Positions 1 to 62,349 of a stretch of 64,000 nucleotides of DNA are shown here, one piece after another (positions within the stretch are counted from its first letter, which is position 1; the number at the start of each line of letters is the position of its first letter). Position numbers and translations under genes: made by a program. Below the pieces are notes generated by a model. It saw nothing but the letters and a program-made list of their open reading frames with translations, did no database searches and was not told where the DNA came from. The stretch lies in the IMG/VR virus record IMGVR_UViG_3300043436_004687, positions 186,001 to 250,000 of that record; one strand, 5' to 3'.

Positions 1-1823
1 GAGTTAGCTAAAATTTTAACTGGTAATTGTTTTTTATCAAATTTATCGGCCAATCCCAATTCAATTTGTCTTTTAGTTTCTAGATTTTTTATTTTAGTGG
101 GTGAATATATTTCTTTATTTTCAATAATTTCTTTTTCTAAAGCTTCTGCATTTTCTTCGTGAATACCTTTTAATTCTTTACTACTATCTCTAGTTTCAAC
201 AATATAGTTTAATAACCCCATCATTACACCTGAAATGTCGTGTTCTGGAAATATATCATGTGTTAGTTGTTCTTTTGGGTATAAAGCAGCGTAGTCTAAT
301 TTTCCCACATTTTTAGCATAACCCACTTCTAATAATCTTGAAAGACCACCAGGAAAAGTTTCTTGTGATTGTAGTTCTGGAATTGCAAGATTATTTTCAT
401 AAGACCAAGCCATCATGATTAATTTCCAAATACCAGCAGTTCCCATTGTAGAACTTCTCATATAAGAAGTTGGAATAAGTTTACCTAATAAAAATGTTGC
501 TTGATTAAAACGAGCGTCTACTTGTTCAGTTTCCCAAAGGTCATCAATAAGATATCTTCTTACTATTTCATCACCAGTAGTTTCAATATATCTATTAGTC
601 TCTTCTAAATTAGATATTTTATCAATATGTTCCTGATTAGTTTCATCGTATTTAAACCAATCACCATTAGAATCATTTAAATAATATTTGTTTTTCCTAT
701 CGGCCCATGTTTTATGGATTATTGAACCATCAATGTAAATTCTATTTGGTTTTGCTATTTTTGAGAATTTTGTAATGTATTTTAAACCTGCTTTTTTAAT
801 ATCTGAATTAATTGCTTGTGCTCTTCTAACGGAGTGCATCACATCAATAACATTGGTACCCCAAATACAAGTTTGTTTATAATGTTCTACATTACCACCT
901 AATTTTAATTGGGCATCTTTACGGTGTATTTTTATTTTTGGGTTTAAAGTTTTTGCAATTTCATCTATTTTTAAACTTAATATATCACCTCTACCAAAAA
1001 AGAAATCCCAGTCAAAATTCTCAGAGTTATAACCAGCTATAATATCTGGGTTTATTTCATGTACAGTGTCAAAAAATTCTTTTATTGCTTCTCTTTCACT
1101 ATCTCTTAATTCTTTACCAGCTAAACTTTTTAATCTTAATAATTGATCTTCTGTAACGCTACTGGGGTCTTTTTCAATATCGTTTAAGGCATCTTGAATG
1201 ATATCTGGTACTTTTACCTCAATAACTTTTTCAAAGCCTCTATTATCTTTCATTCCGATTTGGAATATACTATTTTGACTATGAAATAAACCAGTTGTCT
1301 CAAGGTCAAATTGAAATCTATGCAACTCATCATATTCTTCAAAACCTTTAAATAATCTTTTACCAGTTTGAATTAAAAATTGTTCTGTTGGTGAACAAGT
1401 CATAAAATATTCTTTAAAATTTTGGTCAAAAACATCTACACCACCTTCTTTAAAGAAATTTAATAAATCGGTATATGAGCCATCACATTTAGCAATGTAT
1501 TTATAACCATTCTCCATTCTTTTTGGTGTAATTCCATTATTATCAGTTTTTAAAGCTGATATCTTAACATTGAATTTTTTAGTTGCCTTTGAAATTTCAG
1601 TTCTATCACCACCATACATGATAGAAGCCATCTCATGTTTTAACCACAAAAATGGTTTATATGAAACTTTTTGTATGTATTTACCTTTAACTGGGTCATT
1701 TATTATTAATGATACAGTATTTTGAAAATATGCAGCCTCTATTGCTACAATGTATTTTTGTGGGTCTCTACCTTCTAAGAAGGCTCCGATTTCTTCCCCA
1801 CTGACTTGTTGTTTTTTACTCAT
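1..1823 (-). CDS. Family B DNA polymerase, runs off the left edge (absent from the ORF track)
   Basis: Manual translation from ATG 1823 (MSKKQQVSGEEIGAFLEGRDPQKY...). Contains ExoI FDLETTGL, ExoII GYNSENFDWDF, motif A KLDYAALYP and motif B KQLPVKILANS in frame at the window edge. Confidence 0.93.
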   Translation of the reverse strand, partial: MSKKQQVSGEEIGAFLEGRDPQKYIVAIEAAYFQNTVSLIINDPVKGKYIQKVSYKPFLWLKHEMASIMYGGDRTEISKATKKFNVKISALKTDNNGITPKRMENGYKYIAKCDGSYTDLLNFFKEGGVDVFDQNFKEYFMTCSPTEQFLIQTGKRLFKGFEEYDELHRFQFDLETTGLFHSQNSIFQIGMKDNRGFEKVIEVKVPDIIQDALNDIEKDPSSVTEDQLLRLKSLAGKELRDSEREAIKEFFDTVHEINPDIIAGYNSENFDWDFFFGRGDILSLKIDEIAKTLNPKIKIHRKDAQLKLGGNVEHYKQTCIWGTNVIDVMHSVRRAQAINSDIKKAGLKYITKFSKIAKPNRIYIDGSIIHKTWADRKNKYYLNDSNGDWFKYDETNQEHIDKISNLEETNRYIETTGDEIVRRYLIDDLWETEQVDARFNQATFLLGKLIPTSYMRSSTMGTAGIWKLIMMAWSYENNLAIPELQSQETFPGGLSRLLEVGYAKNVGKLDYAALYPKEQLTHDIFPEHDISGVMMGLLNYIVETRDSSKELKGIHEENAEALEKEIIENKEIYSPTKIKNLETKRQIELGLADKFDKKQLPVKILAN

Positions 1824-1852: not shown

Positions 1853-1884
1853 CAAATATATTCTGTTTTACAATAGTTTCCAAA
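1853..1884 (-). promoter_or_regulatory. Bacteroidota-type housekeeping promoter for the polymerase
   Basis: Minus strand TTTG (1881-1884), 20-nt spacer, TATATTTG (1853-1860); matches the TTTG/TAnnTTTG consensus. Confidence 0.75.
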
Positions 1885-1949
1885 TTAAAAGGGTTTTTTA
1901 ATTTTATTCTTATATTTATTTGTAATACAAATCATTAAAAAGTATTACA

Positions 1950-2810
1950 ATGACAATAGATGAATTTATGACAACCCATCGTTATGGGTATAATATAGTT
2001 AGTGGTAAGGTTGAACAATTTAAATATTATGATTTAGATAAATCATATATTGAGTTAATTAAAAATAATAGATTTTCACTTGTCGTTAAATCTAGGCAAA
2101 TGCACTTTACAGATGTAATGGCTGGTTATACTGCGTGGCATTTATTATTCAACACCAATTTAGATAGTGTGGATGTGGGTTACATAACGGTTAATTTGCA
2201 GTCAGGTTATCATTTTAAAGAAAGAGTAATATCATATTTAAGGAAATATGGGTTTAATTATAAAGATTATTTAATTGATAATAAAGGTAAAATTATGTTA
2301 CCTAATGGAAATAACTTGACAATATTCCCAACAAATATAGACGCTTTTCGTGGTGTTAGTTTTAACGGGTTGTTAATTATAGATGAAGCAGCATATATAA
2401 AAAATTTTAAAAAAATATATGAGGTAATAGTTTCTTCTATCAGTGAAAATTGTCAACTTATAGTTGGTTCAACCCCAAATGGAATTGAATTTTTTTATAG
2501 ATTGTATGAAAATTCAGTTACTGGGTGTAATATTTTTAAATCATTACAAGTTAATTATAAAAATCATCCAAACCGTAATCAAGAATGGTATGATGATATG
2601 TGTGAACATTTAACAGAACCCCAAATAAAAATCGAATTATTAGGTGAGTTTTTTATAGAAGAAAAAGAAAAAAAGAATAAAAAATTAAATCAAATAATTT
2701 TTAGAGTTGAAGATGATATAATGTTAAAAATAAATAAAAAATTAATTGATTTTGATATTAAAATGTCTGAATATATTAGAGGTTTAATTCTAAAGGATAT
2801 TAATCAATAA
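1950..2810 (+). CDS. Terminase-large-subunit-like ATPase domain without nuclease, with C-terminal ribbon-helix-helix-like tail
   Basis: VVKSRQMHFT, LIIDEAAYI, GSTPNG and IELLGEF parallel the motifs of the full TerL at 52152-53918. The C-terminus QIIFRVEDD...MSEYIRGLILKDI has an RHH pattern. Confidence 0.75.
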   Translation: MTIDEFMTTHRYGYNIVSGKVEQFKYYDLDKSYIELIKNNRFSLVVKSRQMHFTDVMAGYTAWHLLFNTNLDSVDVGYITVNLQSGYHFKERVISYLRKYGFNYKDYLIDNKGKIMLPNGNNLTIFPTNIDAFRGVSFNGLLIIDEAAYIKNFKKIYEVIVSSISENCQLIVGSTPNGIEFFYRLYENSVTGCNIFKSLQVNYKNHPNRNQEWYDDMCEHLTEPQIKIELLGEFFIEEKEKKNKKLNQIIFRVEDDIMLKINKKLIDFDIKMSEYIRGLILKDINQ

Positions 2811-3160: not shown

Positions 3161-3781
3161 TTATGTTGTTAATATTTTATAATATTCTTTTACTTTTTTT
3201 GTTACATCTTCCAAGCCAATTATCCCACCATTTACACGAATACGAATTCTTCTAATAGTTAAATCATCAACTCTAGATGCAATAGACCATAATTTATTAG
3301 AATTAAAGTAAAATATTGCTGATTCTAACGCATAAGTAGTTTCCACTAATTCTGGATTTTTTAATAAATCCACTTTTAAGAAATCCCCTAATAATTTAAA
3401 ATTATTTTTACCAGTAGTCTGAAGTGCACCTTTTCCCGAATACTTCCAACCATCACCAGATGCTTCATTTCCGTTACCCATTCGATTAGCATACACTCTA
3501 TTTGCTATTCTTTCTGGTTTTCTAGCGTATTGTTTAGCAATTTCAAGTGTTTTAAAATATTTTGGGAAAATTTTTAATAACCCATTAGCGGAATAATTAA
3601 GATTTTCTTTAAAAACTGTGAATTCAGCGCATTCATGTGAAACATTTCCCATAAAATGTGCTAAAGCTTCAATTGTTGGAATATTATATTTATCTTTTAT
3701 TTTTAAAAGAGTTTTTTTACCTATTTTACCATCTGGTGTTAAACCATTATTTTTTTGAAATTCGATTATAAATTTATTCAT
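3161..3781 (-). CDS. GH19 endolysin with N-terminal peptidoglycan-binding domain
   Basis: FQKNNGLTPDGKIGKKT (PG_binding_1-like), AHFMGNVSHE, ENLNYSA, GNGNEASGDGWKY.GKG..QTTG, VNGG..GL. Confidence 0.92.
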   Translation of the reverse strand: MNKFIIEFQKNNGLTPDGKIGKKTLLKIKDKYNIPTIEALAHFMGNVSHECAEFTVFKENLNYSANGLLKIFPKYFKTLEIAKQYARKPERIANRVYANRMGNGNEASGDGWKYSGKGALQTTGKNNFKLLGDFLKVDLLKNPELVETTYALESAIFYFNSNKLWSIASRVDDLTIRRIRIRVNGGIIGLEDVTKKVKEYYKILTT

Positions 3782-3791
3782 ATTTTTGTGT

Positions 3792-5177
3792 TTATGGTTT
3801 TATGTAAATTATACGACTACCAGTTAAAGTGTATAAACCACCACTAGGCATATCTGTGTCGTTATCAGCATCTAAATCATTCGAGTATGGTCCATGTGTT
3901 TTAATCGATAATCTATCAACATATGTAGTATTATTCACATCACCAATTATATTATTACCTAATACGATAGAATAATTCCCATTAACTATGGAATTATCAC
4001 CATGTACAAAAGACCCCTCACCATTTGCTGTTGTATTATTACCACCAGCATGTGAATAATTACCAGCAGCTGTTGTGCCGTTCCCCTCGGAATGGGCACC
4101 AGTACCACTAGCTACCGTACCATCTCCTTCAGCGTGTGATTGTTCACCATTAGCTGTTGTGTTAGCTCCTTCAGCATGTGAAGCATTACCACTAGCTACC
4201 GTACCAGCCCCTTCGGCATGTGAGGCATTACCAGCAGCTGTTGTATTAGCCCCTTCGGCATGTGAATATGTCCCAAAGGAATCTAAACCGCTGGGGTTAT
4301 TAGCTTTTATTGAATAACTTCCAGAAGAACCAGCAGTCCAATAATTTGTGTTAGGGTTTGGTAAAACAATACTACTATCATAAAATAATACTAAGTCACC
4401 ATTACTAAATTGCGATAAACCTAAACCATAAATAGAATAACCATTTAATGATTGGTTTGGGTCAAAAACATAAATTTTATCAACATTATTATAAGTAAAT
4501 CTAAAATAATGTATTTTATTAGTGTCAGTAAAATCATATTGATCACCATTATTATTTATATAATCCAAATAATCATTAGTAGGAATTTCTCCAAGATTAA
4601 TAATGTTAACGTTAGGTGAATTTGTTAAGGAATTAGTTGTTATTACATTCAGTTCCTTATAAGCAATTTCTAACATATTATATGTTATTGTGTTACCTAA
4701 CGGGTTATAAATTCCTTTACCAAGATTATTGGGGAAATAGAATTTATAACGATATTCATTAAAAGAACCATAAATAGTGAATTTACATTTAAATATGATT
4801 AATTCATCTTCTCTAACCGTTAAATTTATATTATTTAATCTGTTTTGAATTATAGGGCTTATATATTGTTCTACATTACTTTCATCAATATTAACACCTC
4901 TACCACCAAGCATAAAATAACCTAAATCAATAAATATAAACTTATTATTTTGATTTATTGTTGTACCACTACCAGTATTTCCAGAATAAGGTATTACTAT
5001 TTCCTCTCCGTTAATTCTTTTTAATGTTATTGTTGAGGGTGAAGAAACTGCACTATTTATGGCTAATCCCTTTAAAAAGATTAAATTACCATCTAATTGT
5101 CCCGTAGATAAAACACTACCTTGTGTTATATCATTATATGGACTATGTTCGTTTCTTAATATTAATTTATTTTGCAT
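3792..5177 (-). CDS. Tail fibre/adhesin with YadA-head-like beta-roll repeats
   Basis: About seven 14-aa repeats (SHAEG..T.A.G..) in the C-terminal third; lies in the tail block. Confidence 0.8.
   Translation of the reverse strand: MQNKLILRNEHSPYNDITQGSVLSTGQLDGNLIFLKGLAINSAVSSPSTITLKRINGEEIVIPYSGNTGSGTTINQNNKFIFIDLGYFMLGGRGVNIDESNVEQYISPIIQNRLNNINLTVREDELIIFKCKFTIYGSFNEYRYKFYFPNNLGKGIYNPLGNTITYNMLEIAYKELNVITTNSLTNSPNVNIINLGEIPTNDYLDYINNNGDQYDFTDTNKIHYFRFTYNNVDKIYVFDPNQSLNGYSIYGLGLSQFSNGDLVLFYDSSIVLPNPNTNYWTAGSSGSYSIKANNPSGLDSFGTYSHAEGANTTAAGNASHAEGAGTVASGNASHAEGANTTANGEQSHAEGDGTVASGTGAHSEGNGTTAAGNYSHAGGNNTTANGEGSFVHGDNSIVNGNYSIVLGNNIIGDVNNTTYVDRLSIKTHGPYSNDLDADNDTDMPSGGLYTLTGSRIIYIKP
4000..4275 (-). 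repeat. 42-nt-period coding repeat (SHAEG units)
   Basis: Recurring ccttcggcatgtga / ccttcagcatgtga units at about 42-nt spacing; boundaries approximate. Confidence 0.85.
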
Positions 5178-14318: not shown

Positions 14319-16811
14319 ATGGATAAAAAAAGAATAAAAATATTGGTTTTACCTAGCGATAGGTCTGGTGTTGGAAAATATAGATCTACTGCACCACATT
14401 TACATTTAGAGAAAATGTTTCCTGATGAATTTTCGGTTGATATTGAGTATGAACCTCAATTAGATAACGATGAGTGGTTATCACAATATGATATTATACA
14501 TTATCATAGACAAATAGGTTCGTTTGAAACTACTAAAGATGTTTTAGATAGGTTAGATAGATTAAATATTATCTCAATAATGGATTTAGACGATTATTGG
14601 GCGCCTGGACCACATCACCCAGCTTATTTAACTATAAAATCACATGAAATTGATAAAAAAATTGTAAATAATCTTAGATTAGCTAAAAATATTACCACTA
14701 CAACCGATATATTTGCTAAAGAAATTAGTAAATTAAATAAAAATGTTTTCGTGTTACCTAATGCTATTGACCCTAATGAAAAACAATTTCAAATAACCCC
14801 AATTAAATCAAATAGAATTAGAGTGGGATATTTAGGTGGGAGTTGTTATGATGATAAGACTGAAATATTAACTGATAATGGTTTTAAATTATTTAAAGAT
14901 TTAGATAAAACTGAAAAAGTAGCAACTTTAAATCCAATTACAAATGAAATTGAATATCAACAACCACTTAATTATATAGCAGAACCTTACTCTGGTTTAT
15001 TAAATTGTGCTAAAACTAAATTTATTGATTATGCTGTCACACCTAACCATAATATGTATTGTTCGGAAGCTAAGGTATTAGGTCATAAAAAACTAAATTT
15101 AAGTTTAATTAAATCTGAGGATATTCATGGTAAAAATTTCCACGTTAAAAGAGATGGGGTTTGGGTTGGTAAAGAAGAAAAGTTTTTTAAATTACCTAAA
15201 TTAACTTTAAATAAAAACTTACCGAATTTACAAGAATTAATTGATTTAATCAATAAAGATGATTTAAATTTAATCAATAAAAACGAAGAATTATTTTTAA
15301 AATATAAAAATGTTGTTGGGCGTGGAATTTTTGGTAATAATAATGAAGAAAAGAGTTTAGAAATTAGATGCTCTGTTAAAGGTAAATACTATATATACCC
15401 AAGACCGTATAATTTAAATAAATATGGTGAGGATAGATATTTGGACATGGATAAATGGTTAGAATTTTTTGGTTTTTGGATTGCAGAAGGTTGGACAACC
15501 AAAAGTAAAAATTTAGAACAAGTTGGTGTTTGTCAATCAAAAGGTAATGAGTATTTATCTAGAATGTTTGATTTATTAACTGAAATGGGTTTCAATCCTA
15601 AATATACCAAAGATAAAAAACAAATACGAATTTTTGATAAACAAGTTTGGACTTATTTATCACAATTTGGTGGTGCACATGATAAACATATCCCTAAATA
15701 TATTTTTGATTTATCACCAAGACAAATAAAAATATTTTTTGATTGGTTTGTAAATGGGGATGGATCTCGTGACACTAGTTCTGGTAAATATTTAAAAACA
15801 ACTTGTTACTCTAGTTCTAAAAATTTAATAGATGGTTTACAAGAATTAGCTTTAAAAATGGGATTAGTCACAGGCTTTAAAAATAGGGGTAAAAGACATT
15901 CTATTATTAGAGATAGATATATTACTAATGTAAAAGATTCGTTAGAATTAACAGTATCATCTAAAGGTAAGTATGTTCATACGACACCTTTAGTTCGTTC
16001 GGAAGAACAATTCACCAAACAATATGATGGTTTAGTTTATTGTGTGGAAGTCCCAAATCATATTTTATTGGTTAGAAGAAATGGTAAAATATTTTGGTGT
16101 GGAAATAGTCACAGAAAAGATCTTGAACTTTTAGGTCAAATGGTGTCTAAATTAAATAGTGAAAAATTATTAGATAAAATTCAATTTGTTGCTTGTGGTT
16201 TTGATACTAGAGGCGTTGTAACAACAATCGACCCTATTACCAAAAAAGAAATAGGTAGAAGAGATTCAACACCAATGGAAAGTGTTTGGATTGAATATGA
16301 AAAAATATTTACAAATAATTATACTACAATTAGCCCAGAATATAAAGCTCATTTAATGAGTTTTAATAAAAATGAATTTGTTGGTATTGAAAATGAACCA
16401 TATAGAAGGGTTTGGACTAAAGATGTCAATGCTTATGCGAGTAATTATAATTTATTTGATATTTCATTAGCACCAATTGAATCTAATATTTTTAATGCAA
16501 TGAAATCTAATTTAAAGGTAATTGAATCTGGTTTTTTTAAAAAACCTATTATAGCTTCTAATTATGGTCCATATAAAATTGATTTAATTGATGCTTTTGT
16601 TAAGGGTGGTACTTTTAATGAAAATGGTAATGGTTTTTTAGTTAATAATAACGATAAAGATTGGGTCAGATATATTAAGATGTTAGTTAATAACCCAGAA
16701 AAAATTGAATTATTAGGTAATAATTTATATAATACAGTCAAAGATTTATATTGTATGGATAATGTTACTAAAGATAGAAGAGAATTGTATAATAAATTAT
16801 TAAATAAATAA
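14319..16811 (+). CDS. GT-B (GT4-like) glycosyltransferase interrupted by an intein
   Basis: N-extein has SGVGKYRS, MDLDDYW, VLPNAID, RVGYLGGS. C-extein has SHRKDL, DISLAP...FNAMKSNLKVIESG...IIASNYGPY. Confidence 0.88.
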   Translation: MDKKRIKILVLPSDRSGVGKYRSTAPHLHLEKMFPDEFSVDIEYEPQLDNDEWLSQYDIIHYHRQIGSFETTKDVLDRLDRLNIISIMDLDDYWAPGPHHPAYLTIKSHEIDKKIVNNLRLAKNITTTTDIFAKEISKLNKNVFVLPNAIDPNEKQFQITPIKSNRIRVGYLGGSCYDDKTEILTDNGFKLFKDLDKTEKVATLNPITNEIEYQQPLNYIAEPYSGLLNCAKTKFIDYAVTPNHNMYCSEAKVLGHKKLNLSLIKSEDIHGKNFHVKRDGVWVGKEEKFFKLPKLTLNKNLPNLQELIDLINKDDLNLINKNEELFLKYKNVVGRGIFGNNNEEKSLEIRCSVKGKYYIYPRPYNLNKYGEDRYLDMDKWLEFFGFWIAEGWTTKSKNLEQVGVCQSKGNEYLSRMFDLLTEMGFNPKYTKDKKQIRIFDKQVWTYLSQFGGAHDKHIPKYIFDLSPRQIKIFFDWFVNGDGSRDTSSGKYLKTTCYSSSKNLIDGLQELALKMGLVTGFKNRGKRHSIIRDRYITNVKDSLELTVSSKGKYVHTTPLVRSEEQFTKQYDGLVYCVEVPNHILLVRRNGKIFWCGNSHRKDLELLGQMVSKLNSEKLLDKIQFVACGFDTRGVVTTIDPITKKEIGRRDSTPMESVWIEYEKIFTNNYTTISPEYKAHLMSFNKNEFVGIENEPYRRVWTKDVNAYASNYNLFDISLAPIESNIFNAMKSNLKVIESGFFKKPIIASNYGPYKIDLIDAFVKGGTFNENGNGFLVNNNDKDWVRYIKMLVNNPEKIELLGNNLYNTVKDLYCMDNVTKDRRELYNKLLNK
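14844..16106 (+). mobile_element. Intein (421 aa) with LAGLIDADG homing endonuclease
   Basis: Begins CYDDKTEILT; block B VTPNHNMY; LAGLIDADG-like FFGFWIAEGW and WFVNGDGS; ends VYCVEVPNH...WCGN followed by Ser(+1). Confidence 0.93.
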
Positions 16812-52151: not shown

Positions 52152-53918
52152 TTATCTCATACTAGCAAAAAGCCAACTATAATTATTATTAGGGTCTTGA
52201 GTATTTTGGGTTACATATCTTGGAACATTATTATATTCGTTCATTAATTTCCCACCAACAGAATTAGTTTGTAATTCATTTCCACTAGTTAATCCCCAAG
52301 CATTTAACATGGCTTTGGTTTGATTTGCGGCTTTTTTAAGTTTTTTGAAAGAATTTTCTAATACCCATAAAGCCATACCAAGACACATTAATAAATCGTC
52401 ATGGTAACCCTCCATGTGATCTGGTCTACCATTTTTATAAATGAATGTTTTCATTTCAGCAGTCATTGCTTTGGATTTTATTTTTATTCCTTCTGTCCTT
52501 ACCATTATTTCTAAATTAGAAATTAGTTGTAATCTAACACCAGTCATGCAAAAACCAGCCACCTTTCCGTTAGGGTCCGAAACATCCCCCTCAACTAATT
52601 GAACATTAGCATTGCTAGAAGATTTATCATAATGCATATTAGGACAACCAAGTTCAATTAATTTTAGAACAGTTGTCAAACCAACACCAATGTTATCGAC
52701 AACAACATATGCATTGTATTTAATTCCGTATTCTTTAATTATATTAGCAAATAAATCTGGTTGTATTTTACCCTGATATTCAGCAACTTCTTCCATTGTC
52801 GTAAAATCAATAATAACAAATGCTGAACTATCACTACCATCGCCCCTAGATACATCCGCAGCCAAAATATATTCATGTCCCTCAATCGGTAATTCCCAAA
52901 CTTTAACTAATCCAGAATTACCATCAAACCATGTTTTATCTATAAATTTAGGATCTTCAACATATTTCCTATTTTGGTTATCAATATCTTCATCATCAAT
53001 TACATTACCCCCAGAACCTAAAAATGAAACGTCTAACTCTTGTGCAATTCTCCTTTTATCATTATTCATACCCTTACACATACTCACGTACCAAGATGAT
53101 GTCGGTTTATAACCCAATTTAATCATCTTTTCATAAGACTCATAAGTAAATTCAATTTCTTCAATAGGTTCTTGATCCTTCATCAACCATTTCAAATCTT
53201 TATTATATCTAGGATCTTGATACCATTTCATTTCAATTATATTATATTCATTTTCACCTTTTATTGATTGTTCGTATGTCTTATAATATAAACCATCAAA
53301 ACCATTTGGTGTACTAATTAAAATGGCTTTCCCTCCAGTACTTAAACTGGTAATTGCATTACCATATAAAATGGCTCCATTGTCAACAAAAGCTGCCTCA
53401 TCAAAAATTAAATAAGTTGGTGCATATCCACGTAGTGCATCAACAGAAGTTGCCACTGCAATTATTGTTGTCCCATTAGGTAATATTATTTCTATTTGAG
53501 AATCTTTAATAAAAATAGATTTTTTTTCTTTTTCTGGTGTGCCATAGTATTCAGCCCCCCAAACCCATCTTGGTAATTGAGCAATAAAATCTTTAATACC
53601 CTTTAAAAATTTTTTAGCTAATGTTAATTTATTTGCAATAACCACAATAATTTCTGGGTTTTCTTTACTTGCAAAACTACCTTTTATTGCCATGTATGCT
53701 TGGGTTGTTGTAGAAATACCAGCTTGTCTTGGTTTGGTGATTAAATTAAATCTAAACTTTTCGAAACAATTTATAATTTCAGCTTGTTTTTTGAATAATT
53801 TAAAAGGAACAAACCCTTCCTGAGTTTTATCAAAAGTTCGTAAATAGTTAATAATCGCATATTTTGGATCCATTAAACATTTAGCATATTCTTTAAGAAT
53901 TTCAGAATGTGTTAGCAT
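52152..53918 (-). CDS. terL: Terminase large subunit (T4 gp17-like)
   Basis: KPRQAGIST, LIFDEAAF, ISTPNG, QELDVSF; nuclease motifs AADVSRGDG.D and HDDL.M. Confidence 0.96.
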   Translation of the reverse strand: MLTHSEILKEYAKCLMDPKYAIINYLRTFDKTQEGFVPFKLFKKQAEIINCFEKFRFNLITKPRQAGISTTTQAYMAIKGSFASKENPEIIVVIANKLTLAKKFLKGIKDFIAQLPRWVWGAEYYGTPEKEKKSIFIKDSQIEIILPNGTTIIAVATSVDALRGYAPTYLIFDEAAFVDNGAILYGNAITSLSTGGKAILISTPNGFDGLYYKTYEQSIKGENEYNIIEMKWYQDPRYNKDLKWLMKDQEPIEEIEFTYESYEKMIKLGYKPTSSWYVSMCKGMNNDKRRIAQELDVSFLGSGGNVIDDEDIDNQNRKYVEDPKFIDKTWFDGNSGLVKVWELPIEGHEYILAADVSRGDGSDSSAFVIIDFTTMEEVAEYQGKIQPDLFANIIKEYGIKYNAYVVVDNIGVGLTTVLKLIELGCPNMHYDKSSSNANVQLVEGDVSDPNGKVAGFCMTGVRLQLISNLEIMVRTEGIKIKSKAMTAEMKTFIYKNGRPDHMEGYHDDLLMCLGMALWVLENSFKKLKKAANQTKAMLNAWGLTSGNELQTNSVGGKLMNEYNNVPRYVTQNTQDPNNNYSWLFASMR

Positions 53919-53957
53919 GAGGTTTTTATTAATAAATAGAAGATAGTGAATAAAAAC

Positions 53958-59871: not shown

Positions 59872-62349
59872 ATGTATATGAATAAAGAAACTTCGATAAA
59901 AGTAAACTCAATAATGGAGTTAGCATTTGATGAGGCACATAATTATTACGATTCTCAATTGCGTGTAGAACATTTGTTAATGGGTGTATTGATTGATAAT
60001 GATAATGAATGTATAAAATGCTTAAAAAAAATGTCAATTGATACTGAGAATTTATATAATGAAATAAGTCAATATTTAAACACAATTAATATTTCACCTA
60101 AAATAGTTAAAATAAAAAAGGTTCCCCCGACTGAGGAAACCACTAAATTGTTACGTGGTGTTGAAATTGAATCAAATAAAATGAATAGTGAAAAAGTTGA
60201 AATTGAACATTTTTTCCTTTCAATGTTGTTAGTAGATTGTGAGGCAACTAAAATATTAAATAAAATAAATGTAAATTATAATAATTTTAAAAAAACGCTT
60301 ATGGCATTATCAGAACTAGAAGAAGAGGAAGGTGTAAATAATCTTAGAAACAGCTCAGCCAAATATAAAGGGAAGGCTAATAGTTCTACAACACCAGTTT
60401 TAGATGGTTTTTGTAGGGATATAACTAAATTGGCTTCGGAGGGTAAAATTGATGAAGTTATTGGTAGAGAAAAAGAAATTAAAAGAATTACTCAAATATT
60501 AAGTAGAAAAACCAAAAAAAATGCAATATTAGTTGGTCTTGCTGGAGTTGGTAAAAGTGCCGTTGTTGAGGGTCTCGCATTAATGATTTCAAATAAAACA
60601 GCACCTAGAGTGTTATTGGATAAAAAAATATATACATTAGATATCAATTCAATTGTTGCTGGAACTAAATATCGTGGTCAATTTGAAGAAAGAATGAAAT
60701 TAATTGTGGATGAAGCTAAAGAAAACCCAGAAATAATTTTATTTATTGATGAAATTCATACAATTGTTGGTAGTGGAAATTCTTCTGGAGGGTTGGACGT
60801 TTCAAATATACTTAAACCAGCTTTAGCTAGAGGTGAGTTGCAAATTATTGGTGCAACTACTTTAGATGAGTATAGAGAAAATATAGAAAAAGATAAAGCT
60901 TTATCAAGAAGATTCCAACAAGTTATGATTGAAGAACCTAATTTTGAGGAAACAATAATAATATTAAATAATATTAAAGAAAAATTTGAACAATATCACA
61001 AGGTCCAATATTCAGAAGAGGTAATATTAGAATGTGTCAGATTGGCTGATAGGTATATCAATGATAGGGCAATGCCAGATAAAGCAATTGATATTTTAGA
61101 TGAAGTTGGTGCTGCAACTAATGTTAGTTTAGAAGTACCAAAAGAAATTGTTTTATTGGAGGAAGAAATAAAACAATTGGATTTAAAAAAATTGGAAATT
61201 GTACAAAAACAATTATATGAACAAGCAACAACTCTAAGAGACAATCAGAGAGATAAAACTGATAAATTAGAAAAATTAAAAACTAATTGGTTAAATAAAT
61301 TAAAAAATGAAAAAACACCGATAACCGTTGAAATGATTTGTGATGTTGTTTCTATGATGACTGGGATACCAGTTTCAAAAACCAATAGTGAAGAAAATAA
61401 AAAACTTTCTAATATGGAAAGTAATTTGAATAAAATAGTTATAGGTCAAGAAAATGCAATTTCTAAAATTACTAAAGCTGTTAGGAGAAGCAAAGCTAGG
61501 ATCAAACAAAATACAAAACCTTCAACCTTTATTTTTTTAGGTTCTACTGGAACTGGAAAAAGTATGTTAGCAAAAGAATTAGCTAAAATGGTTTATGGTG
61601 GTGTTGATAATATGATTAGATTTGATATGTCTGAATTTATGGAGAAACATACCATATCTAAACTAATCGGTTCTCCAGCTGGTTATGTCGGTTATGAAGA
61701 AGGTGGTAAATTAACTGAAGCTGTAAAGAATAAACCATATTCTGTGGTGTTATTTGATGAAATTGAAAAGGCCCATCCAGATATATTTAACATTCTATTA
61801 CAAGTTTTAGATGAAGGTAGATTAACTGACAGTCTTGGTAAAACAGTTGATTTTAAAAATACTATAATAATATTAACTTCTAATGTAGGTGTTGCTGAAT
61901 TATCTAGTTTTGGTAGTGGTGTTGGTTTTAAAACTGGTTCTTCTGTTTTAATGGAAGAAGAAAACAAAAAAGCTTTTTTAGAAAAAGCTTTAAAGAAAAA
62001 GTTTGCCCCAGAATTTTTAAATAGGATTGATGAAGTAATAGTGTTCAATTCCCTAAGTGAGGTTAATATTCAAAATATAATTTCAAATGAAATTAATGAA
62101 CTTTCAAATGGGTTATTAGAATCTGGTTATAATTTAAAAATAAGTAAATCAGCTTTAGAATTTATAGGTAAAGAAGGGTATCATCAAGAATATGGTGCTA
62201 GACCATTAAAAAGAGCAATTCAAAGATTAGTAGAGGATCCAATTACTGATGAATTACTAGATGAAAAAATTAGTAAAGGTGATACCATTAAAGTAAGTTT
62301 TGATAAAACCAATAATAAAATAGTAGTTTCAATTGAAAAGTGTAATTAA
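59872..62349 (+). CDS. clpC: ClpC/ClpA-type AAA+ chaperone ATPase
   Basis: Clp-N repeats; GLAGVGKS and LFIDEIH; short UVR-like middle domain; GSTGTGKS and LFDEIEKAHP; GVGF ClpP-binding loop; YGARPL.R. Confidence 0.92.
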   Translation: MYMNKETSIKVNSIMELAFDEAHNYYDSQLRVEHLLMGVLIDNDNECIKCLKKMSIDTENLYNEISQYLNTINISPKIVKIKKVPPTEETTKLLRGVEIESNKMNSEKVEIEHFFLSMLLVDCEATKILNKINVNYNNFKKTLMALSELEEEEGVNNLRNSSAKYKGKANSSTTPVLDGFCRDITKLASEGKIDEVIGREKEIKRITQILSRKTKKNAILVGLAGVGKSAVVEGLALMISNKTAPRVLLDKKIYTLDINSIVAGTKYRGQFEERMKLIVDEAKENPEIILFIDEIHTIVGSGNSSGGLDVSNILKPALARGELQIIGATTLDEYRENIEKDKALSRRFQQVMIEEPNFEETIIILNNIKEKFEQYHKVQYSEEVILECVRLADRYINDRAMPDKAIDILDEVGAATNVSLEVPKEIVLLEEEIKQLDLKKLEIVQKQLYEQATTLRDNQRDKTDKLEKLKTNWLNKLKNEKTPITVEMICDVVSMMTGIPVSKTNSEENKKLSNMESNLNKIVIGQENAISKITKAVRRSKARIKQNTKPSTFIFLGSTGTGKSMLAKELAKMVYGGVDNMIRFDMSEFMEKHTISKLIGSPAGYVGYEEGGKLTEAVKNKPYSVVLFDEIEKAHPDIFNILLQVLDEGRLTDSLGKTVDFKNTIIILTSNVGVAELSSFGSGVGFKTGSSVLMEEENKKAFLEKALKKKFAPEFLNRIDEVIVFNSLSEVNIQNIISNEINELSNGLLESGYNLKISKSALEFIGKEGYHQEYGARPLKRAIQRLVEDPITDELLDEKISKGDTIKVSFDKTNNKIVVSIEKCN

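What the first reader, a model, noticed from the sequence alone, without database searches (positions are those of the whole stretch)
1950..2810. Second terminase-like ATPase with altered P-loop, no nuclease and an RHH-like DNA-binding tail
Seen: it parallels the ATPase half of the genuine TerL (52152-53918) motif by motif, but RQAGIST has become RQMHFTD (the Gly is lost). Where the nuclease domain should start there is a ~40-aa beta-alpha-alpha RHH-like segment. It is divergent from the polymerase and has the putative late motif (1913-1919). Inference: a repurposed terminase paralog, for example a packaging regulator, a dominant-negative inhibitor of competing phages' packaging, or a decoy for terminase-sensing defences such as Avs.
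Basis: partly seen in the sequence, partly recalled or inferred. Interest (0 to 1): 0.6.

Follow-up and report, generated by a model that had tools for sequence, protein, structure and literature searches.

The report
Self-regulated terminase-like DNA-binding protein family
A 340-kb phage carries, besides its real DNA-packaging enzyme, a conserved late gene in which the enzyme's ATPase half (with eroded catalytic motifs) is fused to a small ribbon-helix-helix DNA-binding domain; matching twin palindromes sit on its own promoter, and its role is still unknown.

Summary
ORF 1950-2810 (+), 286 aa, is a paralogue of the ATPase half of the phage's own TerL (27% identity, E 9e-19). Its AlphaFold model (pLDDT 96) best matches the T4 gp17 ATPase domain. 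The P-loop Gly is His, and no nuclease domain is present. The last ~42 residues are a ribbon-helix-helix (RHH) domain.

It is not a decayed fragment. It belongs to a large family of 250-334-aa proteins known only from metagenomes: 86 of the best 150 cluster representatives. This family is separated from ordinary TerLs by a branch with 99% support. The RHH tail is its best-conserved part. Catalytic residues that are near-invariant in true TerLs are eroded in different ways in different clades.

New finding: every family gene examined, whatever its neighbours, is preceded by a late-type box (TATTTAT) and two copies of the palindrome TGTAWTACA just before the ATG (window 1921-1929 and 1941-1949). 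The same box precedes TerL, tail-fibre and head-protease genes.

Best reading: a late, self-repressing, site-specific DNA-binding pseudo-terminase that probably acts with the packaging machinery. The role of the ATPase-like domain is inferred, not shown. The decoy and dominant-negative ideas remain untested.

The parts
1950..2810 (+). CDS of the 286-aa terminase-ATPase-like / RHH fusion protein (P0001); the stop codon is included
   Evidence: ORF listing and translation. Homologues of the same length at 63%, 56% and 31% identity. 86 family representatives.
1950..2663 (+). TerL-type ATPase-like domain (aa 1-238)
   Evidence: BLASTP to own TerL, E 9e-19. PHROG_2 E 7.8e-21. AF2 pLDDT 96.1. Foldseek best match T4 gp17 ATPase domain 2o0j, TMq 0.72.
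2088..2114 (+). Degenerate Walker A / P-loop, KSRQMHFTD (aa 47-55). The Gly that is near-invariant in true TerLs is His52 here; Lys47, Arg49 and Gln50 are kept.
   Evidence: Alignments. True TerLs have G in 38/39. The family has H 44, G 20, Y 12, F 4 of 86.
2370..2387 (+). Walker B, LLIIDE (aa 141-146). The catalytic Glu146 is retained in this member.
   Evidence: Alignment. Family: D 77/86, E 57/86, N 20/86. True TerLs: D and E 39/39.
2469..2483 (+). STPNG motif (aa 174-178; the TerL 'C-motif')
   Evidence: Identical in the phage's own TerL. S174 is present in 81/86 family members.
2682..2807 (+). Ribbon-helix-helix domain (aa 245-286). The strand lies around IIFRV, with Arg252 present in 85/86 members. 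Helices span 255-268 and 272-284, and the SxYIRxLIxKD motif is conserved.
   Evidence: Pfam RHH families hit by 51/45/25 of 86 tails. AF2 models. Foldseek top hits are nearly all RHH proteins. These are the most conserved columns of the family.
1912..1919 (+).
   Evidence: Oriented, position-restricted motif before about 70 genes, including TerL, tail-fibre/baseplate and head-protease genes. Conserved upstream of family genes in other phages.
1921..1929 (.). Palindrome copy 1, TGTAATACA (putative RHH operator half)
   Evidence: Conserved in 10 of 10 family loci fetched by protein only. 7/8 family genes scored vs 1/475 other ORFs carry two such sites within 70 nt upstream, p 5e-14.
1941..1949 (.). 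Palindrome copy 2, AGTATTACA. It is 20 bp from copy 1 and ends at the base before the ATG.
   Evidence: Relatives have TGTAWTACA here.
1853..1860 (-). TATATTTG box (TAnnTTTG type) of the divergent DNA polymerase gene. It is a different promoter class from that of the finding.
   Evidence: PolB upstream region, o248. TATCTTTG occurs in 50 of 210 upstream regions.
52152..53918 (-). Genuine large terminase (588 aa: ATPase plus nuclease), the parent paralogue. It is preceded by the same late-type box.
   Evidence: PHROG_2 E 1.1e-48 and Pfam Terminase_6N. Its upstream sequence CTTCTATTTATT lies 13 nt before the ATG.

Best explanation
The gene encodes a functional, conserved late protein made of two parts: a terminase-type ATPase fold whose catalytic site is no longer under the constraint seen in real terminases, and a C-terminal ribbon-helix-helix domain.

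Proposed mechanism:
1. RHH domains work as dimers, so the protein should dimerise through the tail.
2. Two dimers should then sit on the two TGTAWTACA palindromes, which lie one or two helical turns apart between the late promoter box and the start codon of its own gene.
3. This would shut off its own late promoter once enough protein is made. The protein would therefore be held at a low, set level during the period when heads are filled.
4. The ATPase-like half is not a motor. It most likely acts as a docking or nucleotide-sensing module that touches the real terminase or the DNA it handles, giving the packaging machinery a sequence-specific DNA-binding accessory or regulator.

Shown here: the homology, the fold, the family, the erosion of catalytic motifs, the late-type promoter class, and the conserved twin palindromes.

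Inferred, not shown: binding of the RHH to the palindromes, self-repression, and any link to packaging.
For: - Paralogy and fold.
- Real, selected gene: 86 full-length representatives among the best 150 hits of an exhaustive profile search. They lie on one side of a branch with SH-aLRT 99 against 61 ordinary TerLs.
- Catalysis relaxed. True TerLs of this clade keep K 35/39, G 38/39, the putative trans-arginine-finger Arg 36/39, D 39/39 and E 39/39. The family has K 54/86, G 20/86, R 44/86, D 77/86 and E 57/86.
- Two alternative erosion patterns: Lys kept with Gly lost, or Gly kept with Lys lost and Glu changed to Asn. The second pattern occurs in at least 3 clades. Only 2 of 86 members keep all four residues.
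- The tail is RHH and is the most conserved part.
- Cis element: late box plus two TGTAWTACA copies directly before the ATG in 10 of 10 loci fetched by protein alone. These proteins are 25-64% identical and sit in three or more different gene neighbourhoods.
- Association statistic: 7/8 family genes vs 1/475 other ORFs, p 5e-14.
- A scan of IMG/VR with the promoter-plus-palindrome pattern returned 4 loci, 3 of them 2-5 nt upstream of a family gene.
- In the 340-kb genome, this pair is the only clear one at a promoter.
- Late class: the same box precedes TerL, tail-fibre/baseplate and head-protease genes, while PolB uses a TAnnTTTG box.
Against: - No experiment or prediction here shows DNA binding or any contact with TerL. 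The complex prediction gave no verdict.
- This particular member keeps Lys47, Arg49, Gln50, Asp145 and Glu146, so it could still bind or even hydrolyse ATP.
- The gene is not next to the TerL and portal genes. It sits among replication genes or in variable neighbourhoods, often alone on its strand, which is also how accessory 'moron' genes behave.
- The same promoter-plus-palindrome pattern occurs without the gene in 15 of 24 metagenome loci. Eight of these belong to a dispersed intergenic repeat on bacterial contigs, which look Bacteroidota-like. Another factor may therefore recognise this sequence.
- In the 20-bp-spaced versions, the two copies can also form a 9-bp RNA hairpin ending at the AUG (-7 kcal/mol, z -2.4 to -3.0).
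Confidence: 0.5

Rival explanations
1. It is the DNA-recognition subunit of the terminase, a functional replacement for the small terminase. The RHH binds the twin palindrome as the packaging start (pac) site, which lies next to its own gene as pac sites often lie in or near terS. The TerL-derived domain recruits TerL to cut there.
For: - No TerS was detectable: Pfam PF11053, PF03592, PF05119 and PF16677 have no hit in the complete genome, and 7 ORFs upstream of TerL have no TerS PHROG hit.
- There is one good site per genome, as expected for a pac site.
- The gene has a late-type promoter box, like TerL.
- It descends from TerL.
Against: - Small terminases are very divergent, so absence by HMM is weak evidence.
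- The gene is far from TerL.
- The site lies exactly between the promoter box and the ATG, which is the classic place for an operator.
- No ring-forming oligomerisation domain is evident.
- No read data could be obtained to map packaging ends. The 127-bp terminal repeat is only an assembly overlap.
Confidence: 0.2
2. It is purely a transcription factor, for example a timer of the late period. The terminase-like domain serves only as an oligomerisation or ligand-sensing domain, and there is no link to packaging.
For: - The RHH tail is the most conserved part.
- The operator-like site is on its own promoter.
- Precedents from general knowledge: RHH domains fused to large sensor or enzyme domains, such as NikR and PutA, are among the top structural matches of the tail.
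Against: - Only one clear site exists in 340 kb, so there is no evident regulon beyond itself.
- A complete, well-folded TerL ATPase domain with several TerL-specific motifs (RQ, STPNG) is retained across the family.
Confidence: 0.15
3. It is a conflict gene: either a decoy for terminase-sensing immune proteins (Avs1-3, Upx) or a dominant-negative poison of rival phages' terminases. Tight self-repression keeps it from harming the phage's own packaging.
For: - It behaves as a self-contained single-gene cassette with its own promoter and operator, in variable neighbourhoods and often on the opposite strand to its neighbours.
Against: - Avs2 and Avs3 read ATP and active-site features of the terminase (PMC13601566). 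This family alters exactly those features.
- A decoy needs no sequence-specific DNA-binding domain, yet that domain is the best-conserved part.
- The family is deep, single-copy where a whole genome could be checked (the window's own), and in several lineages syntenic with PolB, gp13-like, glutaredoxin and SNF2 genes. This looks more like a core gene than a hotspot gene.
Confidence: 0.1
4. The palindromes are not the RHH's target. They would be bound by a host factor or act as an RNA hairpin that masks the start codon, and the RHH binds somewhere else.
For: - The same pattern occurs in bacterial intergenic repeats without the gene.
- A 9-bp hairpin can form in the 20-bp-spaced versions.
Against: - The hairpin is lost in the 10-bp-spaced loci (L010: -0.2 kcal/mol, z +1.3; L006) and in L015, while the 9-mer itself is kept.
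- No other gene of this genome has the pair at its promoter.
- The element travels with the gene through different genomes and neighbourhoods.
- One bacterial locus (L163) has the same palindrome pair 16 nt from a stand-alone RHH gene.
Confidence: 0.1
5. It is a recently decayed duplicate of TerL (a pseudogene or fragment).
For: The nuclease is missing and the P-loop Gly is lost.
Against: - The ORF is intact.
- 86 diverse full-length relatives share a conserved tail gained in place of the nuclease.
- The AF2 model is confident.
- The promoter and operator are conserved.
Confidence: 0.01

Closest known systems
Large terminase TerL of T4-like phages (T4 gp17 N-terminal ATPase domain; Pfam Terminase_6N, PHROG_2)
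   Same: Same fold and clear homology: 27% identity to the phage's own TerL, and T4 gp17 ATPase domain as best PDB match. It shares the K-S-R-Q start of the deviant Walker A, the Walker B DE in this member, and the STPNG motif. It also has the same late-type promoter box as TerL.
   Different: It has no RNase H-like nuclease domain. The P-loop Gly is replaced. Across the family, catalytic residues that are invariant in TerLs are variable. It is about 15 residues shorter at the N-terminus. It has an RHH domain at the C-terminus and forms a separate clade (99% branch support).
T4 vs.8, an uncharacterised terminase-ATPase-like protein (PMC13601566)
   Same: It is a second, small, nuclease-less terminase-ATPase-like protein encoded by a T4-type phage alongside the real TerL. 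Its function is unknown.
   Different: vs.8 is 219 aa, keeps a canonical GKS Walker A and DE Walker B, and has no RHH tail. It is only remotely similar to this family (hhalign probability 84%, E 7.7e-6 over 116 columns).
Ribbon-helix-helix repressors fused to larger domains (Arc/CopG type; NikR, PutA)
   Same: The tail has the RHH sequence pattern and a predicted strand-helix-helix. Repeated palindromic sites one or two helical turns apart lie on its own promoter, the classic arrangement for self-repression.
   Different: In NikR and PutA the RHH is N-terminal; here it is C-terminal. Its partner domain here is a terminase ATPase fold, a combination not found in the Pfam, PHROG, PDB and paper searches run here, nor in 50,697 GenBank phage records.
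Small terminase (TerS)
   Same: If the packaging link is right, it would do what TerS does: bind a specific site on phage DNA, often next to its own gene, and work with TerL.
   Different: It has no homology to any TerS family, is not adjacent to TerL, has no evident ring-forming domain, and carries an RHH instead of a helix-turn-helix.

Membership tests
Large terminase (TerL) | N-terminal ASCE ATPase domain of terminase type | tested here: met
   BLASTP E 9e-19 to own TerL. PHROG_2 E 7.8e-21. Foldseek match to T4 gp17 ATPase, TMq 0.72. Pfam Terminase_6N scores 21.9 bits, just under the 22-bit cut-off.
Large terminase (TerL) | Intact Walker A with the P-loop glycine | tested here: not met
   KSRQMHFTD has His where 38/39 true TerLs have Gly.
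Large terminase (TerL) | Walker B Asp and catalytic Glu | tested here: met
   LLIIDE is present in this member. Glu is present in only 57/86 of the family, against 39/39 true TerLs.
Large terminase (TerL) | C-terminal RNase H-like nuclease domain | tested here: not met
   The protein ends at residue 286. No Terminase_6C or nuclease match. The model shows only two short helices after the ATPase fold.
Ribbon-helix-helix superfamily | Strand-helix-helix of about 45 residues with the RHH sequence signature | tested here: met
   51/86 tails hit NikA-like, 45 hit CopG_antitoxin and 25 hit RHH_1, best E 1.9e-7. AF2 model of the tail has pLDDT 92.6. Top Foldseek matches are nearly all RHH proteins at TMq 0.7-0.8, with non-significant E-values for this short query.
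Ribbon-helix-helix superfamily | Dimerisation that pairs the two strands into a DNA-reading ribbon | not tested
In monomer models the strand is simply extended.
Ribbon-helix-helix superfamily | Binding to repeated or palindromic operator sites | tested here: inconclusive
   Twin TGTAWTACA palindromes are conserved before the gene in 10/10 independently fetched loci, but binding itself cannot be shown with these tools.
Small terminase (TerS) | Homology to a known TerS family | tested here: not met
   No TerS family appears among the Pfam or PHROG matches of the protein.
Small terminase (TerS) | Gene adjacent to TerL | tested here: not met
   The gene lies about 50 kb from TerL, next to PolB.
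Small terminase (TerS) | Physical interaction with TerL | tested here: inconclusive
   Complex prediction gave 'no answer', which is no evidence either way.
T4 vs.8-like proteins | Short terminase-ATPase-like protein with canonical GKS and DE motifs | tested here: not met
   vs.8 has GGRQSGKS and IIDE and no tail. Profile similarity to the family is only remote.

The most novel reading that the evidence does not exclude
In this clade of large T4-like phages, the small terminase has been replaced by a TerL-derived protein. A catalytically dead copy of the motor's own ATPase domain, fused to an RHH, recognises a twin-palindrome packaging site beside its own gene and brings the real TerL to it. 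This would be a new class of terminase recognition subunit, born by duplication of the large subunit.
Probability: 0.2. Interest if true: 0.85.

Novelty: new variant of a known kind. Interest (0 to 1): 0.62.

Why it matters
Terminases are among the best-studied viral machines. A second, nuclease-less, DNA-site-specific copy of the motor's ATPase domain has not been described in the sources I could search. Yet it forms a large, old family in uncultured big phages, whose hosts are probably Bacteroidota.

It gives a clean, testable system: a 45-residue DNA-binding tail, a 9-bp palindrome, and a promoter. It may reveal one of three things:
- a new way in which phages choose where packaging starts;
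- a new regulator of the motor;
- a pseudo-enzyme used in phage-host or phage-phage conflict.

It also matters for annotation. The protein scores just under Pfam's terminase cut-off. It is either left as hypothetical or called 'terminase large subunit', which can mislead terminase-based phylogeny and phage binning.

Tried and rejected
- Complex prediction of the phage's TerL with this protein (both with alignments) scored 0.00, 'no answer'. This is not evidence for or against binding.
No reads could therefore be laid, and neither expression nor packaging ends could be examined.
- A loose twin-palindrome scan of IMG/VR was mostly chance matches: 1 of 80 loci carried the gene. The stricter promoter-plus-palindrome pattern was used instead.
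- Three tblastn searches of 50,697 GenBank phage records with diverse family members found only ordinary TerLs. The one near-full-length hit checked (LR756504) is a 768-aa TerL.
- P0006 (360 aa), first taken as a relative, looks like the front part of a split or frameshifted ordinary TerL: it has an ordinary KSRQLGLST P-loop, no RHH tail, and an overlapping 192-aa ORF follows it.
- The Bacteroidetes LexA motifs (GGA-N5-TCC, CTAA-N5-TTAG; PMC8565304) do not match the palindrome. A literature search for the palindrome itself gave only noise.
- The tail HMM found no related RHH protein in the pattern-positive loci that lack the gene.
- No canonical small terminase was found in the genome. This is weak negative evidence only.
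- Paper searches for a terminase paralogue with an RHH or a pseudo-ATPase found nothing relevant.
Full report
**What is there**

Window 1950-2810 (+) is an intact 286-aa ORF (P0001). The window lies in a 339,635-bp, 26% G+C virus record. The record's 127-bp terminal repeat is an assembly overlap. The genome holds only two terminase-like genes: this one and the genuine TerL at window 52152-53918 (minus strand, 588 aa).

The two proteins align over 233 residues at 27% identity, E 9e-19, motif by motif: KPRQAGIST / KSRQMHFTD, LIFDEAAF / LIIDEAAY, STPNG / STPNG. PHROG_2 (terminase large subunit) matches at E 7.8e-21. Pfam Terminase_6N scores 21.9 bits against a cut-off of 22.

An AlphaFold2 model built on an 86-sequence family alignment has mean pLDDT 96.1 and pTM 0.86. 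Its best PDB matches are the T4 gp17 ATPase domain (2o0j, TMq 0.72, E 4.8e-16), followed by other large terminases. There is no nuclease domain.

**The tail is a ribbon-helix-helix**

After a Lys-rich linker, the model shows an extended segment and two helices (255-268 and 272-284).
- Scanned singly, 51 of 86 family tails hit Pfam NikA-like, 45 hit CopG_antitoxin and 25 hit RHH_1 (best E 1.9e-7).
- A profile of the tails weakly finds RHH chains in the PDB, including 1x93, 7e4j and NikA 2ba3.
- An AF2 model of the tail alone (pLDDT 92.6) has as its top ~50 Foldseek matches almost only RHH proteins: NikR, Arc, CopG, PutA, AmrZ, ParD, HicB, AtaR. These align at TMq 0.7-0.8 and rmsd about 1-1.5 A over 40-43 residues. 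E-values are not significant for so short a query.

**It is a large conserved family, not a decayed fragment**

The word-indexed search found full-length relatives at 63%, 56% and 31% identity. All carry KSRQMH[FM]T and the same tail.

An exhaustive profile search of 1.84 billion representatives gave 6263 hits. Among the best 150, 86 are proteins of 167-334 aa (nearly all 250-334 aa) that carry the tail motif, and nearly all of these match the whole profile.

A maximum-likelihood tree of the ATPase part (153 rows) puts 61 ordinary TerLs, including this phage's own, on one side of a branch with SH-aLRT 99. The 86 tailed proteins, plus 6 short tail-less ones, lie on the other side.

Three tblastn searches of 50,697 GenBank phage records with diverse members found only ordinary TerLs. 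The family is therefore known so far only from metagenomes. The ESM Atlas names its cluster 'terminase large subunit N-terminal domain-containing'.

**Conservation pattern**

The most conserved columns are in the tail: Arg252 85/86, Ser273 82, Tyr275 85, Arg277 81, Leu279 82, Ile280 78, Asp283 79. Arg49 (83/83 of the residues present at that column), Gln50 and Met51 of the P-loop region are also highly conserved.

| Residue (P0001 numbering) | True TerLs of this clade (of 39) | RHH-tailed family (of 86) |
|---|---|---|
| Lys47 (start of P-loop) | 35 | 54 |
| Gly at position 52 | 38 | 20 (His 44, Tyr 12, Phe 4) |
| Arg134 (putative trans finger) | 36 | 44 |
| Asp145 | 39 | 77 |
| Glu146 | 39 | 57 (Asn 20) |

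The erosion takes two alternative forms. In one, Lys is kept and Gly is lost (our protein). In the other, Gly is kept, Lys is lost and Glu becomes Asn; this form occurs in at least three separate clades. Only 2 of 86 members keep all four residues.

From established knowledge of terminase ATPases, the P-loop, the catalytic Glu and the trans-arginine finger are needed for hydrolysis (PMC5727402, PMC6379665). The family as a whole therefore looks released from selection for motor activity while the fold is kept. This particular member keeps Lys, Arg, Gln, Asp and Glu, and may still bind nucleotide.

**A conserved cis element travels with the gene**

Aligning the upstream regions of the window and two relatives showed a nearly invariant last 50 nt. 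It contains a box, ATATTTAT (window 1912-1919). This is followed at once by the palindrome TGTAATACA (1921-1929) and, 20 bp later, AGTATTACA (1941-1949), which ends at the base before the ATG.

I then fetched, by protein identity alone, loci of ever more distant members: 25-64% identity, all motif types, and at least three different neighbourhoods.
- PolB / gp13-like neck / glutaredoxin / SNF2 helicase.
- Pol-beta nucleotidyltransferase / DUF1152.
- Metallophosphatase / primase-like.

All 10 show the box plus two copies of TGTAWTACA just before the ATG. The copies are spaced 20 bp apart in most loci, about 10 bp in L006 and L010, and 23 bp with a TGTATGACA variant in L015.

Supporting numbers:
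- Two sites (one mismatch or fewer each) within 70 nt upstream occur in 7 of the 8 family genes that the script scored, against 1 of 475 other ORFs of the same sequences (p 5e-14).
- In the 340-kb genome the 9-mer is not enriched, and this is the only clear pair at a promoter.
- A scan of IMG/VR with the box-plus-palindromes pattern gave 4 loci, 3 of them 2-5 nt upstream of a family gene.
- The same scan of JGI metagenomes gave 24 loci, 9 with the gene directly downstream.

The other 15 metagenome loci matter as a caveat:
- Eight belong to a dispersed intergenic repeat on 36-43% G+C bacterial contigs, which look Bacteroidota-like, with unrelated flanking genes.
- Two are tandem arrays.
- The remaining five are single loci of unclear nature.

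None of the three genome-contig loci carries the gene. One of them (L163) has the same palindrome pair 16 nt from a stand-alone RHH gene.

An RNA hairpin between the two copies can form in the 20-bp versions (-7 kcal/mol, z -2.4 to -3.0). It cannot form in L010, L006 or L015, where the 9-mer is nevertheless kept. Integer-turn spacing, internal dyad symmetry and a position between the promoter box and the ATG are what a dimer-of-dimers RHH operator looks like (general knowledge of Arc, CopG and MetJ). Binding itself is inferred.

**Timing**

K-mer enrichment over 210 upstream regions of the genome shows two promoter classes.
- TAnnTTTG boxes: TATCTTTG occurs in 50 regions, and TATATTTGC in others. 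These precede PolB and a Lon-like protease. This is the Bacteroidota-type -7 box, and with the lack of Shine-Dalgarno sequences it points to a Bacteroidota host (inference from general knowledge).
- (A/C)TATTTAT(A/T), mostly 3-35 nt before the ATG of about 70 genes, with a strong orientation bias. These genes include TerL, tail-fibre/baseplate proteins and the head maturation protease.

The finding's gene has the second class. It is therefore most likely expressed late, together with the packaging and structural genes. The divergent polymerase gene uses the first class.

**What it probably does**

The supported core is a late, self-limiting, site-specific DNA-binding protein whose large domain is a terminase ATPase fold that no longer needs to be a motor. 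What that domain does is open.

I favour a packaging-linked accessory or regulator. The reasons are its descent from TerL, its predicted co-expression with TerL, the retention of the TerL-specific RQ and STPNG motifs and of the whole fold, and the fact that tight self-repression suits a protein that would disturb the motor if over-made.

A sharper version is that it replaces the small terminase and that the twin palindrome is the pac site. This fits three observations: no TerS is detectable; there is one site per genome; and pac sites commonly lie in or near terS (general knowledge). But the evidence is indirect and the gene is far from TerL.

The other readings are not excluded: a pure transcription factor, a conflict gene (decoy or dominant-negative), and a host-factor or RNA explanation of the palindromes. 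They are weighed in the rivals section.

The closest published analogue is T4 vs.8. [quoted passage not shown] It keeps canonical GKS and DE motifs, has no RHH, and is only remotely similar (hhalign 84%, E 7.7e-6).

**What could not be done**

- The complex prediction with TerL gave no verdict.

**Verdict**

This is a new variant of known kinds, a TerL ATPase fold plus an RHH, forming a sizeable and previously undescribed family with a clear, testable cis element.

Noticed in passing
whole genome G000; e.g. window 1853-1860 (minus strand, before PolB) and before window 59872: About a quarter of upstream regions carry a TAnnTTTG box (TATCTTTG in 50 of 210), often continued as TATCTTTGTAGTGTATTAATCA. 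No Shine-Dalgarno sequences were apparent in the upstream regions inspected (not counted). This is the Bacteroidota-type -7 promoter element, so the host is probably a Bacteroidota bacterium and these are probably early or host-polymerase promoters.
   Followed up: partly
whole genome; e.g. window 53932-53939 region before TerL, 5189 region before the tail-fibre-like gene: A second promoter class, (A/C)TATTTAT(A/T), lies mostly 3-35 nt before about 70 genes, including TerL, tail-fibre/baseplate and head-protease genes. It is the reverse-complement spelling of the T4 late box TATAAATA but is oriented the other way relative to the genes.
   Followed up: partly
L140, L142, L144, L146, L153, L154, L162, L165 (metagenome and MAG contigs, 36-43% G+C): A conserved ~70-nt intergenic repeat (ATATTGTNNCAGG..TATTTATTGTATTACA..N..TGTAWTACAATA) is dispersed between unrelated genes of bacterial contigs that look Bacteroidota-like (L165 is a Bacteroidales MAG). 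It carries the same twin palindromes as the phage element but has no terminase-like gene nearby. Its nature is unknown: a repeat element or a site for a host factor.
   Followed up: partly
L163 (bacterial MAG contig DAOVHI010000051.1), around 825-860: The same palindrome pair lies 16 nt from a divergent stand-alone RHH (antitoxin-like) gene, a possible free-living relative of the operator/RHH pairing.
   Followed up: no
L149 and L156 (metagenome contigs): Tandem arrays of a ~19-bp unit containing TTATTTATTGTAATACA.
   Followed up: no
genome position 255463-255497 (outside the window, window-equivalent 69463): This is the only other intergenic pair of palindrome-like sites in the genome (TGTATTACA and TGTATTATA, 26 bp apart). 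It has no late box and may be chance.
   Followed up: no
window 3-1823 (minus strand; runs off the window; 1269 aa in the genome): Family-B DNA polymerase, divergent from the finding. In relatives it is followed by gp13-like neck, glutaredoxin and SNF2 helicase genes in conserved order, some with LAGLIDADG insertions.
   Followed up: partly
window 3161-3781 (minus strand): Endolysin (phrog_181, E 1.7e-58), apparently with an N-terminal peptidoglycan-binding-like segment (judged from the sequence only).
   Followed up: no
window 3792-5177 (minus strand): A 461-aa protein with a run of Gly/Ala-rich SHAEGxxTxAxG repeats, preceded by a late box. It is probably a fibre or spike protein.
   Followed up: no
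window 59872-62349 (+): An 825-aa ATP-dependent protease (phrog_4871, E 7.6e-244) with an early-type TATCTTTG promoter. This is unusual cargo for a phage.
   Followed up: no
window 14319-16811 (+): An 830-aa protein combining glycosyltransferase-like and thymidylate-synthase / ribonucleotide-reductase-like matches, possibly a DNA-modification enzyme.
   Followed up: no
P0025, P0038, P0039, P0058, P0064, P0082 (family side of the tree): Six short members of the family clade lack the RHH tail. Two (P0038, P0039) share a different C-terminus ending in SLERE, so the tail has been lost or swapped in some lineages, or these are truncated records.
   Followed up: no
L137 8257-8913 (minus strand), phage T4 vs.8: T4's own small terminase-ATPase-like protein keeps canonical GGRQSGKS and IIDE motifs. 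It shows that second terminase-like genes occur more widely in T4-type phages than usually noted.
   Followed up: partly
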